64,000 nt of DNA, from positions 992,001 through 1,056,000 of the forward strand of contig NC_134034.1 in assembly GCF_964204645.1 (NCBI RefSeq). The letters are read 5' to 3'. Origin of the DNA: Tubulanus polymorphus. Taxonomy: Eukaryota; Animalia; Nemertea. Shown piece after piece: positions 57,330-60,264 of the stretch. Below the pieces are notes generated by a model that saw nothing but the letters and a program-made list of their open reading frames with translations, was not told the DNA's origin and did not search any database. Position 1 is the first letter of the stretch. Each line of letters begins with the position of its first letter. The position numbers and the translations under genes were made by a program.

Positions 57330-57482
57330 GTTATTGGCAGGTATGTGACTGGTGAGTTGGTTCGCGTGGGACAAACCGAATAACTTGATAGAAATCAAGT
57401 CGGTGTAGTAAATAACAGGGAAAAACATCCCTTGATTTCGAGATGAGTACGAACATTGGAATGAACGAATTTGGTGTCAAAC

Positions 57483-57821
57483 CATCCTCCCCCGACAGGG
57501 ATTCGAACCTGATGGCATCGAGATTGCCACGGCACGAAACCCTGCCATAATCGACCGTGTGCGCAGATACATGCGCAGTTCAGATGATGTGATTTTTAGC
57601 CAATCAGAAATCCCGTTTTATTTTAGCCCGGGTTTTCCCATTTATAGTTCATCCTTGAAATTTGCCTCAACGATTATACAACGAGCGATCTGATTGGTGC
57701 CGCAAGTTTTCGTTCGTAAAGCTGCGCATGTACCTGCGCACCCGGTCTACTGATGCAGGGGTTCGTGCCGTGGCTGAGTGTAGCGATGCCATCAGGTTCG
57801 AGTCCCTGCAGAGGGAGGATG
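57483..57821. mobile_element. 339-bp MITE with ~100-bp imperfect TIRs, copy 1 (MULE-like)
   Basis: CATCCTCCC...GGGAGGATG; flanks gtgtcaaac/gagtcaaac (8 of 9 match). Confidence 0.75.
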
Positions 57822-58237
57822 GAGTCAAACTAAACCGTTTGTAAACAGTCGAAGAAATCCCACAATTCGAATTTTATACGATATGATTTATCAAAACGAA
57901 ACCGCAACGTTTCTGCTGTTGACTAACAGCCATCATCAGGTGAAATGTGACCCGTAACAGAAGTAGCATATCATATGAACTTACAGGACGTAAACAAATG
58001 CTATATGCGTCATAATTAGAATTAACAGAACAAGCGACCATTTAAACCGAGTATGATAAGTCTTCCTTACTCGGTATATGTTATGCCAATCTCAGTCGCA
58101 GGGATTCGCATCCGATGACATCGTCGCAGGCTGTTGATTGTATCAGAATTATAAATGGTACCTACAAGTCACAATCTCCTGGATTTGAATCTGAGAGTAT
58201 CATCGTGCCTGTGTTTCTATACTTGATTATTGGGTGT

Positions 58238-58296
58238 AGAGGGGATAGCGCGTACGCAGTCCCCCACTACCAGAAATTGTACACCCGAGTCTCCCA
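58238..58296 (-). pseudogene. 3' fragment of a second U1 snRNA gene (half of SL3, Sm site, SL4)
   Basis: 58/59 identical to 60101-60159, with a different downstream flank. Confidence 0.93.
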
Positions 58297-58947
58297 GTCT
58301 AACTGCTAACCAACGTGAAAGTGTCATAAAAGCATGGAATAAGTTGGATCCACATGATGGGAACATCCAACGGTTTGATAGCCTATACACTTCACGCTGG
58401 GGAAATACGTTGTTTGGTAGAACGAAGGGAGACCCCGAGGACGCATCAGTGGTGCAGAAATTAAAATTCGGGAAAAGATTTGCACCTGCACACCTCGTTG
58501 ACTCGCGAAAAAATCGTCTGATGTACTGTATTATCAAACAGCTGTGGCTTCGTCGTCAAGAGAGAACTGCTCGGATTTCCCCACAAAAACGGATCATAAC
58601 AAATGTTTACCAAAGGCTGCAGCAGCGAATTACGGTAGATGACCCAGTTCTGAGCAAATTAGCAATTCTTTTATTGAAAATAAATACAAAACCCGTCTCC
58701 GAGTTCATTCGACGACAGGAAGCACTAGCAGGTAAGAATATAACTGACCAAGGTTTATCAGTACTGAAACGGTATGAAATTGTTACCAGCGCTGAACAAC
58801 CACCAAGTAATGAATTACCGGAAAAACGACCACCAAATAACAGACCCCAAACCGAATACACAGATGCAGTCAACATGTCTGGCACACGACGGGGACTCAA
58901 AGTTCGTCGGGATTACTTAGTTGAGCCACCATCGAGCAATGAAAACA
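58297..58947 (+). mobile_element. Transposase fragment, probably the C-terminal region of a Dada-type element
   Basis: LT..QR..V..AWN....HD...QRFD.LY...WGNTL..RTK, QR.Q.RI.V.DPVL.K..I.L.KINTK.V..FIRRQE; resembles, from memory, proteins of snRNA/tRNA-targeting Dada transposons; abuts the U1 fragment; no search run. Confidence 0.6.
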
Positions 58948-59286
58948 CATCCTCCCCCGGCAGGGATTCGAACCTGATGGCATCGAGATTGCCACGGCAC
59001 GAAACCCTGCCATAATCGACCGTGTGCGCAGATACATGCGCAGTTCAGATGATGTGATTTTTAGCCAATCAGAAATCCCGTTTTATTTTAGCCCGGGTTT
59101 TCCCATTTATAGTTCTTCCTTGAAATTTGCCTCAACGATTATACAACGAGCAATCTGATTGGTGCCGCCAGTTTTCGTTCGGAAAGCTGCGCATGTACCT
59201 GCGCACCCGGTCTACTGATGCAGGGGTTCGTGCCGTGGCTGAGTGTAGCGATGCCATCAGGTTCGAGTCCCTGCAGAGGGAGGATG
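58948..59286. mobile_element. 339-bp MITE, copy 2, truncating the transposase fragment
   Basis: About 5 substitutions relative to copy 1; no matching TSD. Confidence 0.75.
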
Positions 59287-60100
59287 GTTATACACCCAAC
59301 GTTCATTCCAATATATCCTATAATCCTTCATCAACTTTCATCACAATATCTGAACTGCTGTAATTTCCATTTTTTTTGCCTCAGATATTGCCATATGTAT
59401 TGAAAGCCTAAAATTTTAAATGATGAGCTGTAGTAATTAGAGAGAGATCGACTATGTCTAAAGAAAAGATTTCAAATACGTATATTTAATTTTAGTTGAC
59501 GGCTGATATTTATTGAGAACTAAGAGCTGAGGATTTTTACACCAACATCTACCCGAGGAAAGGCTACAATAAACATTCGGACTATTTACACGTGGAAAAC
59601 GACCAAAAAAATGTTAAAAATTGACAAAATGATCTTCAACCTTGTAATATAGTTATTTCCTAAATCTTGATGTATTAAATTAGGCAGCCAACTAAATTAA
59701 CCCCAATCAGTCGCTTGCCGGTTCAGACTGCTTGGATGATTGTTTGAATGAACCGGAACCGAAAATTTCAAATTATGTACTTCGATTTAAACAAAAAATT
59801 CTGTAAACTCGAAAAAAAAAAGCAGTGAAAATGAAGATGATTTGATATGGCAGTCGTTTTCATATCCTAAATATTGGATATGATAGTCCTACATCATTGG
59901 GTTTTGTTTTTGCTTGGGGTTAGTTTCATTTGGATTCTGAAGGGTTAGTTTCCTGTTGTTTTGGGTGTGTGCTGCAAGAAAAGGGACATTGTAATGGTTG
60001 AACAGTTAAATAATCTTCTGCTTTCCGTCTCGGGGAAGAACATCTGGACAGTAATTAAGAGGTTTGTTTGAATTAACCGTTCCATTTTTCGTTTGTTCAT

Positions 60101-60264
60101 AGAGGGGATAGCGCGAACGCAGTCCCCCACTACCAGAAATTGTACACCCGAGTCTCCCACATTTGGGGAGATCGTATGGGTCAACCAGTCTTTGTGCAAT
60201 GACAGGCCTCGCCATAGAGGCACCGCCTTCCAGATCACGGTGGACCTCTGTGCCAGGTAAGTAT
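60101..60264 (-). ncRNA. RNU1: U1 spliceosomal snRNA gene, apparently intact
   Basis: ATACTTACCTG 5' end, SL1 loop GATCTGGAAG, SL2 loop ATTGCAC, SL3 CCCCAAATGTGGGAG, Sm site AATTTCTGG, SL4 GGGGACTGCGTTCGCGCTATCCCC; 164 nt. Confidence 0.97.

What the first reader, a model, noticed from the sequence alone, without database searches (positions are those of the whole stretch)
58238..60264. Broken U1 snRNA gene fused to a probable Dada (snRNA-targeting) transposase relic, beside an intact U1 gene
Seen: a 59-nt 3' piece of U1 (58238-58296, minus) with its own downstream flank runs directly into a stop-free ~215-codon plus-strand reading frame, and an intact U1 lies about 1.8 kb to the right. The ORF-track 261-aa ORF is a chimera of antisense U1, this frame and a MITE end. 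Established: Dada DNA transposons insert site-specifically into U1, U6 and tRNA genes. Inference: the peptide (WGNTLFGRTK, DPVLSKLAI.LLKINTK.V.EFIRRQE) matches my recollection of Dada C-terminal regions, so this would be a U1-targeting element inserted antisense to U1 and later deleted at both ends. That would point to a U1-specific DNA transposon family in this invertebrate lineage.
Basis: partly seen in the sequence, partly recalled or inferred. Interest (0 to 1): 0.8.

Follow-up and report, generated by a model that had tools for sequence, protein, structure and literature searches.

The report
Dead U1-targeting Dada transposon fragment
A 651-base dead fragment of a Dada-type jumping gene, from the branch that in fish inserts only into U1 snRNA genes, is fused to the tail of a broken U1 gene in the ribbon worm Tubulanus polymorphus; this extends that branch beyond fish, but it is otherwise an ordinary transposon relic.

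Summary
Window 58238-58296(-) is the last 58-59 nt of U1. It abuts a stop-free 217-codon frame (58296-58946,+), and an intact U1 lies at 60102-60264(-).

The peptide is 56-60% identical (E about 1e-70) to fish proteins that match the published Dada-U1A_DR transposase. The matching region lies between its catalytic core and its C-terminal zinc finger.

In the carp Cirrhinus, a complete element of this kind splits a U1 gene with the transposase antisense to U1. The window shows the same arrangement. However, the worm junction lies 10-16 nt beyond the canonical insertion site and in mid-coding sequence. The original terminus and target duplication are therefore gone.

The right end is cut at a MITE that has no target duplication. 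The genome holds only one other copy of this lineage (contig C4). It is decayed and has no U1 within about 10 kb.

Verdict: this is a dead relic of a U1-targeting Dada lineage. I found that lineage described only in ray-finned fish, so this is a new member of a known kind. Specificity for U1 in this worm is inferred, not shown.

Earlier scan notes on this genome describe tRNA- and U6-targeting Dada elements, but none of the U1 lineage.

The parts
58238..58296 (-). 3' piece of a U1 snRNA gene (U1 nt about 106-163, C10-type variant), broken 10-16 nt 3' of the position that matches the fish Dada-U1 target
58124..58237 (-). the broken U1 gene's own 3' flank; unlike the intact gene's flank, but of the same style as other C10 U1 loci
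58297..58947 (+). relic of a Dada-U1-lineage transposase gene (217 codons read from 58296), covering the region between the catalytic core and the C-terminal CCHC finger; no DDE domain, no zinc fingers and no termini
58230..59015 (+). mechanical 261-aa ORF: a chimera of antisense U1, the Dada relic and the MITE end; no ATG start
58948..59287 (.). 340-bp MITE-like element with 38-bp terminal inverted repeats; it truncates the relic, and its two flanks show no target-site duplication
57482..57822 (.). second copy of the same MITE (98% identical), flanked by GTCAAA on both sides
59365..60089 (-). 5'-truncated non-LTR retrotransposon fragment with a poly(A) tail and a TSD of about 10 bp (AAAAATGGAA), carrying a nested 289-bp insertion (59529-59817); inserted 22 nt downstream of the intact U1
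60102..60264 (-). intact U1 snRNA gene, identical to two other C10 copies

Best explanation
A Dada DNA transposon of the U1-targeting lineage (relatives: zebrafish Dada-U1A_DR and U1B_DR) once inserted into a U1 gene of the contig-C10 U1 cluster of Tubulanus polymorphus. It went in the usual orientation, with the transposase antisense to U1. The copy then died and was cut down on both sides. One deletion removed the 5' two thirds or more of the element, including its terminus, N-terminal zinc finger and DDE core, together with 10-16 nt of U1. That deletion joined mid-coding sequence directly to U1 nt 106. On the other side, the C-terminal zinc finger, the 3' terminus and the U1 5' half were lost at a MITE that has no target duplication, probably through recombination or deletion at the MITE. 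What remains does nothing today. Shown: homology to Dada-U1, the orientation, the breakpoints and the scarcity of copies. Inferred: the original targeted insertion and the two deletions.
For: (1) The peptide hits fish proteins at E = 1e-70 to 1e-76 and 56-60% identity. Those proteins match Dada-U1A_DR in Kojima & Jurka's Dataset S1. Of the families aligned there, only U1A_DR and U1B_DR carry the FIRRQ motif.
(2) Other Dada families of the same genome (tRNA- and U6-associated) match a profile of this region at 12 bits or less. In the N-terminal region they are at most 36% identical, against 49% for the C4 sister relic. The relic therefore belongs to the U1 lineage and not to the resident families.
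(3) In Cirrhinus, a complete element of about 11.2 kb lies between reverse-complement U1 164->89 and 96->1. The two pieces overlap by 8 bp (CTGCGAAT), and the transposase is antisense to U1. The window has the same half of U1, on the same side, in the same orientation.
(4) The U1 breakpoint (105/106) lies only 10-16 nt from the equivalent of the fish TSD (nt 90-95).
(5) The genome holds only about 26 U1 places and two relics of this lineage, so direct abutment by chance is very unlikely.
(6) In the C4 sister copy, DUF6729 (the Dada N-terminal region) lies upstream and coding sequence continues past 58947. Both window ends are therefore truncations.
(7) MITE copy 2 lacks the TSD that copy 1 has.
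Against: No transposon terminus, sub-terminal repeat or TSD survives, so targeted insertion cannot be read from the junction. The U1 break is not at the canonical site. The only sister copy (C4) has no U1 or other small-RNA gene within about 10 kb. The U1 genes of this cluster read GACCCATACGATC where the fish target reads GACCCCTGCGAAT, so the fish recognition sequence is not conserved in the U1 type that flanks the relic. I could not compare it with Dada-5S, the sister lineage of Dada-U1, at protein level.
Confidence: 0.8

Rival explanations
1. Secondary juxtaposition. A Dada-U1-lineage relic happened to lie near a U1 gene in this U1-rich, transposon-rich region, and an unrelated deletion fused them. 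The element never sat inside this U1 gene.
For: The junction is non-canonical and needs a deletion in any case. The C4 sister relic is not near U1. Contig C10 between 0.7 and 3.4 Mb carries about 21 U1 places, several of them disrupted by other elements.
Against: The orientation, the half of U1 retained, and a breakpoint within 16 nt of the canonical site all fit a targeted insertion. The relic belongs to the one Dada lineage known to target U1.
Confidence: 0.12
2. The relic comes from a lineage with a different target, for example Dada-5S (the sister of Dada-U1), and its contact with U1 is incidental.
For: Kojima 2022 (PMC8869645) places Dada-5S next to Dada-U1 and notes that their target sequences are similar. 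I could not compare Dada-5S proteins, because the supplement holds DNA only.
Against: The relic is closer to fish U1A (56-60%) than the U1B-like protein is to U1A (43-47%). It physically abuts U1. No 5S gene lies near either relic.
Confidence: 0.05
3. The open frame is a domesticated or expressed host exon derived from Dada, comparable to dDada in carps.
For: The frame has 217 codons without a stop, while the C4 copy carries frameshifts and a stop.
Against: There is no ATG, and the frame starts in antisense U1 and ends in a MITE. No catalytic or zinc-finger domain is present. The differences from C4 run 15 non-synonymous to 8 synonymous, which is near neutral.
Confidence: 0.02
4. A retrotransposon-mediated chimera or processed retrocopy joined U1 RNA to a Dada transcript.
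For: Non-LTR retrotransposons with poly(A) tails do disrupt U1 genes in this genome, and one lies 22 nt from the neighbouring intact U1.
Against: The relic has no poly(A) tail. U1 and the coding fragment are head to head and not co-linear. The apparent 'intron' in the C4 copy has no GT-AG ends and is a later insertion. The same region is also uninterrupted in Micropterus.
Confidence: 0.01

Closest known systems
Dada-U1A_DR and its relatives (Danio, Cirrhinus, Micropterus; Kojima & Jurka 2013, Kojima 2022)
   Same: They share 56-60% amino-acid identity over all 217 codons. The conserved blocks are the same (WNKLD, RWGN.LFGRT, DSRKNRLMYC, TVDD, EFIRRQEAL). The position in the protein is the same, after the DDE core and before the CCHC finger. 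The element is antisense to U1, with the U1 3' part on its 5' side.
   Different: The host is a nemertean, not a fish. Only 651 bp survive. There is no DDE domain, zinc finger, terminus or ATTCGC TSD. The junction lies 10-16 nt off the canonical site. The relic falls outside the fish U1A clade, whose members are 74-82% identical to each other.
Dada-U1B_DR (zebrafish) and the U1B-like metagenome protein P0006
   Same: The region is homologous, carries the FIRRQ motif and belongs to the same U1-targeting lineage.
   Different: Identity is only 44%. The relic is nearer to U1A than U1B is.
Dada-5S (goldfish, herring)
   Same: The literature describes it as the sister lineage of Dada-U1 with a similar target sequence (PMC8869645).
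   Different: It targets 5S rRNA genes. No 5S gene lies near either relic. It was not compared at protein level here.
The 8.26-kb tRNA-targeting Dada family of the same genome (C8, C6, C19)
   Same: It belongs to the same superfamily, has a DUF6729 N-terminal region, inserts site-specifically into small-RNA genes with a 6-bp TSD, and forms tandem copies.
   Different: Its copies are at least 99.8% identical and intact, so it was active recently. It targets the tRNA A box (TAGCTC/TAGCGC). Its C-terminal region is barely alignable with the relic (no more than 3-12 bits against the profile).

Membership tests
Dada superfamily | Protein homology to described Dada transposases | tested here: met
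   E = 1e-70 and 56-60% identity to fish proteins that match Dada-U1A_DR in the published alignment.
Dada superfamily | DDE catalytic core with a DxxH motif | tested here: not met
   This is absent from the window. tblastn with fish proteins, including the N-terminal part, finds only 58296-58955. The fragment is a truncation and was never a complete member.
Dada superfamily | N-terminal CCCC and C-terminal CCHC zinc fingers | tested here: not met
   Neither finger is in the window. The C4 sister relic keeps the N-terminal DUF6729 region. Fish relatives P0006 and P0007 carry the CxxC...H...C finger downstream of the region.
Dada superfamily | Insertion into a multicopy small-RNA gene with a 6-7 bp TSD | tested here: inconclusive
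   The relic abuts a U1 3' piece, but at nt 105/106 and not at the site equivalent to the fish TSD (nt 90-95). No TSD can be read.
Dada superfamily | No terminal inverted repeats, but short sub-terminal inverted repeats that are also present in the target | not testable with these tools
   Both termini of the element have been deleted.
Dada-U1 lineage | Closer to U1A/U1B than to other Dada lineages | tested here: met
   FIRRQ occurs only in U1A_DR and U1B_DR in Dataset S1. The resident tRNA- and U6-type Dada elements barely match the profile. In the tree, the relic lies between U1B-like and fish U1A sequences. Dada-5S was not included.
Dada-U1 lineage | Transposase antisense to U1, with the U1 3' part at the element's 5' side | tested here: met
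   The Cirrhinus element L067 has reverse-complement U1 164->89 on the left, the transposase on the plus strand, and reverse-complement U1 96->1 on the right. The window has the same left-hand arrangement.
Dada-U1 lineage | Other genomic copies also lie in U1 genes | tested here: not met
   The only other copy (C4:19074850-19079832) has no U1 within about 10 kb at Rfam E <= 1 or by short-word BLAST. Its ends are decayed.

The most novel reading that the evidence does not exclude
Dada-U1 is an ancient bilaterian lineage that died out in this worm after the main U1 family (contig C10) changed the recognition motif through a compensated stem substitution. C10 U1 genes read GACCCATACGATC, whereas the minority C3 U1 genes keep the fish-like GACCCCTGCGATC. 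That would be target escape by a multicopy RNA gene. The alternative is that the relic records a horizontal transfer between marine animals and fish: the nearest relative (61%) comes from a TARA ocean metagenome.
Probability: 0.1. Interest if true: 0.6.

Novelty: new member of a known kind. Interest (0 to 1): 0.35.

Why it matters
The papers I could search describe U1-targeting Dada elements only in ray-finned fish (PMC3706591, PMC8869645). Only the U6-targeting lineage was known to span several animal phyla. A U1-lineage relic fused to U1 in a palaeonemertean suggests one of two things: U1 targeting is very old, like U6 targeting, or it has moved between distant animals. The finding adds a data point. 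It does not add a mechanism, because the copy is dead and its informative ends are gone.

Tried and rejected
- Pfam on the peptide gave nothing. The family is recognisable only through homologues and the published alignment.
- The processed-retrocopy idea was rejected. The 2.2-kb interruption in the C4 copy lacks GT-AG ends, and Micropterus has no intron there.
- I looked for continuation of the Dada coding sequence, or a CCHC finger, to the right of the MITE (59288-60101). tblastn, a regex search and Smith-Waterman against C4 found none. That stretch is instead a truncated LINE plus the 3' flank of the intact U1.
- There is no U1 or other RNA gene around the C4 relic.
- There is no U1 in the metagenome contigs of P0005, P0006 and P0008, or in the Micropterus locus. 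These are short or decayed and therefore uninformative.
- I looked for further copies of the U1 lineage among the 36 DUF6729 matches in the genome. Only C4 qualifies.
- The supplement of the 2022 paper holds DNA only, so Dada-5S proteins could not be compared.
- A protein-atlas look-up for taxonomy was uninformative. The species came from a 100% protein match.
- I did not run the large representative-protein search, because the family question was already settled.

Full report
**Observation.** Rfam finds one complete U1 gene in the window, at 60102-60264 on the minus strand (139.4 bits, full model). The stretch 58238-58296(-) repeats the last 58-59 nt of that gene with one mismatch. The match stops sharply at ...CCCCAAATG|TGGGAG, which is U1 nt 105/106. 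Beyond the U1 3' end, the fragment has a flank of its own. It is unlike the intact gene's flank but of the same style as other contig-C10 U1 loci, so the fragment comes from a real second U1 gene. From 58296, the plus strand reads 217 codons without a stop. The 261-aa ORF in the mechanical list is a chimera of antisense U1, this frame and the start of a MITE.

**What the frame is.** Pfam gives nothing for the peptide. The word search finds 11 proteins at E = 1e-27 to 1e-76 with 45-66% identity. They include uncharacterised proteins of Danio rerio, Micropterus salmoides, Cirrhinus mrigala and Tetraodon. The Danio protein carries DUF6729 in front of the matching region.

The full-length alignment of Dada transposases published by Kojima & Jurka (PMC3706591, Dataset S1) contains this region in Dada-U1A_DR. 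It is nearly identical to the Danio protein and shows the same blocks as the window peptide. The motif FIRRQ occurs only in Dada-U1A_DR and Dada-U1B_DR in that alignment. The region lies after the DDE core and before the C-terminal CCHC finger. The longer relatives P0006 and P0007 show that finger.

The N-terminal part of the Danio protein matches the zinc-finger region of Dada-U1A_DR. DUF6729 is therefore the N-terminal region of Dada transposases. As an independent check that DUF6729 marks real Dada elements in this genome, I examined an 8.26-kb family with copies at least 99.8% identical. It sits in tRNA-Met and tRNA-Lys genes at the A box, with 6-bp duplications, and once as a tandem pair.

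**Lineage.** Within the genome, the 217-aa peptide finds only one other place: C4:19074850-19077532. That copy is 90-93% identical in DNA, carries a stop, frameshifts and a 2.2-kb insertion, and has a decayed DUF6729 region 1.6 kb upstream. The resident tRNA- and U6-associated Dada elements match a profile of this region at 12 bits or less. In the N-terminal region they are at most 36% identical to the zebrafish U1A protein, against 49% for the C4 relic.

In a small tree, the window peptide falls outside the fish U1A clade, whose members are 74-82% identical to each other. It is still nearer to that clade (56-60%) than the U1B-like sequence is (43-47%). Its nearest relative (61%) comes from a TARA ocean metagenome. 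The relic therefore belongs to the U1-targeting lineage, with one reservation: the sister lineage Dada-5S could not be compared.

**Relation to U1.** In Cirrhinus, the gene for P0007 lies in an element of about 11.2 kb. It is flanked on the left by reverse-complement U1 164->89 and on the right by reverse-complement U1 96->1. The two pieces overlap by 8 bp (CTGCGAAT), and an intact U1/U2 array follows. The transposase is thus antisense to U1, and the U1 3' part lies at the element's 5' side. The window shows the same arrangement.

The junction itself is not the original one, for two reasons. The coding homology begins within one or two codons of the U1 piece, at roughly the last quarter of the protein. 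And U1 is missing nt 90/96-105 relative to the canonical site. A deletion must have removed the element's 5' part together with 10-16 nt of U1.

On the right, homology to the C4 copy ends exactly where a 340-bp MITE starts. This MITE copy has unrelated flanks (GAAAACA and TTATAC), whereas its twin at 57482-57822 is flanked by GTCAAA on both sides. That points to a deletion or recombination at the MITE. Nothing Dada-like follows the MITE.

The stretch between the MITE and the intact U1 consists of 74 nt of flank, a 5'-truncated poly(A) retrotransposon with a TSD of about 10 bp, and 22 nt of U1 3' flank. With the later insertions removed, the relic lay about 100 bp behind the intact U1. The picture is two tandem U1 genes, of which the second was hit.

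**Weighing.** Four independent features fit a targeted insertion: direct contact with U1, the correct half of U1, the correct orientation, and a breakpoint within 16 nt of the known site. This holds in a 268-Mb genome with only about 26 U1 places and two relics of the lineage.

Three points weigh against it. No terminus or TSD survives. The C4 relic has no U1 or any Rfam match within about 10 kb. And the C10-type U1 reads GACCCATACGATC where fish U1 reads GACCCCTGCGAAT; only the C3 U1 variants keep GACCCCTGCGATC.

I put the identity as a Dada-U1-lineage relic at about 0.97, and the claim that it originally inserted into this U1 gene at about 0.8. Domestication is unlikely: there is no start codon and no domain, and the differences from C4 run 15 non-synonymous to 8 synonymous. 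A retro-chimera is also unlikely, because there is no poly(A) tail and the two parts lie head to head.

**Species and novelty.** An ankyrin-SOCS protein encoded in the window is 100% identical to a protein of Tubulanus polymorphus, so the host is a palaeonemertean. In the searchable literature, Dada-U1 is described only from ray-finned fish (five orders). Dada-U6 is the one lineage known from four phyla. No paper links Dada with nemerteans.

Earlier notes of this scan describe tRNA- and U6-targeting Dada elements elsewhere in this genome. I saw the tRNA cases independently. None of the notes mentions a U1-lineage copy.

The finding is a new, dead member of a known kind. It modestly widens the known range of U1-targeting Dada elements and raises, without settling, the question of ancient descent against horizontal transfer.

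Noticed in passing
G000 C10:2391186-2398751 (L025/L026) and C10:2099185-2103237 (L027/L028); window 59365-60089: A low-copy non-LTR retrotransposon (ORF1 with a CCHC knuckle, RT with zf-RVT, poly(A) tail) splits two U1 genes at the same 3' junction (U1 nt 74), with TSDs of 15 and 8 bp. An older 5'-truncated copy lies 22 nt behind the window's intact U1. Only six copies of its 3' end were found in the genome, so three of the six are in or beside U1. The two split loci may be duplicates of a single event.
   Followed up: partly
L023 (C10:1354205-1355500) and L024 (C10:1832303-1833565): Two more U1 genes are split at nt 22-36 by poly(A) insertions of about 1.1 kb with a TSD of about 15 bp (CCACCGTGATCTGGA). 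The inserts have diverged from each other, so this is probably an old duplicated event.
   Followed up: no
L025, about 35 nt inside the 7.4-kb insertion next to U1 nt 88: The 5' end of the full-length retrotransposon copy begins with an ATG followed by codons that read MSGRGKGGKG and then a stop. From memory this looks like the start of histone H4, which could mean 5' template switching or a captured leader.
   Followed up: no
window 58948-59287 versus 57482-57822: These are two 98% identical copies of a 340-bp MITE with 38-bp TIRs. One has a GTCAAA target duplication and the other has none, which suggests a deletion or recombination at the MITE that truncated the Dada relic.
   Followed up: partly
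U1 loci L007-L022 (C3 versus C10): There are two U1 families. Most C10 copies read GACCCATACGATC, while three of the four C3 copies read GACCCCTGCGATC or GACCCTTGCGATC (the fourth reads GACGTCTGCGATC) at the position of the fish Dada-U1 target. The difference looks like a compensated stem change.
   Followed up: partly
L060/L061 (C8:13360000-13379999), L064, L062, L063: An 8.26-kb Dada family with copies at least 99.8% identical lies in tRNA-Met and tRNA-Lys A boxes, once as a head-to-tail pair. The flanking hexamers do not always match (TAGCTC on one side, TGGCGC on the other). Other agents of this scan have already reported this.
   Followed up: partly
P0004 (Danio XP_009298892), Pfam DUF6729: The annotated zebrafish protein is a gene model of a Dada-U1A copy that skips the DDE core. 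Pfam DUF6729 corresponds to the N-terminal zinc-finger region of Dada transposases, a link I did not find stated in any paper.
   Followed up: partly
L066 (C9:11297000-11306999): A DUF6729 (Dada) coding region on the minus strand lies about 1.4 kb from a tandem array of intact U6 genes (period 1286 bp) on the plus strand. This is consistent with a U6-targeting Dada element.
   Followed up: no
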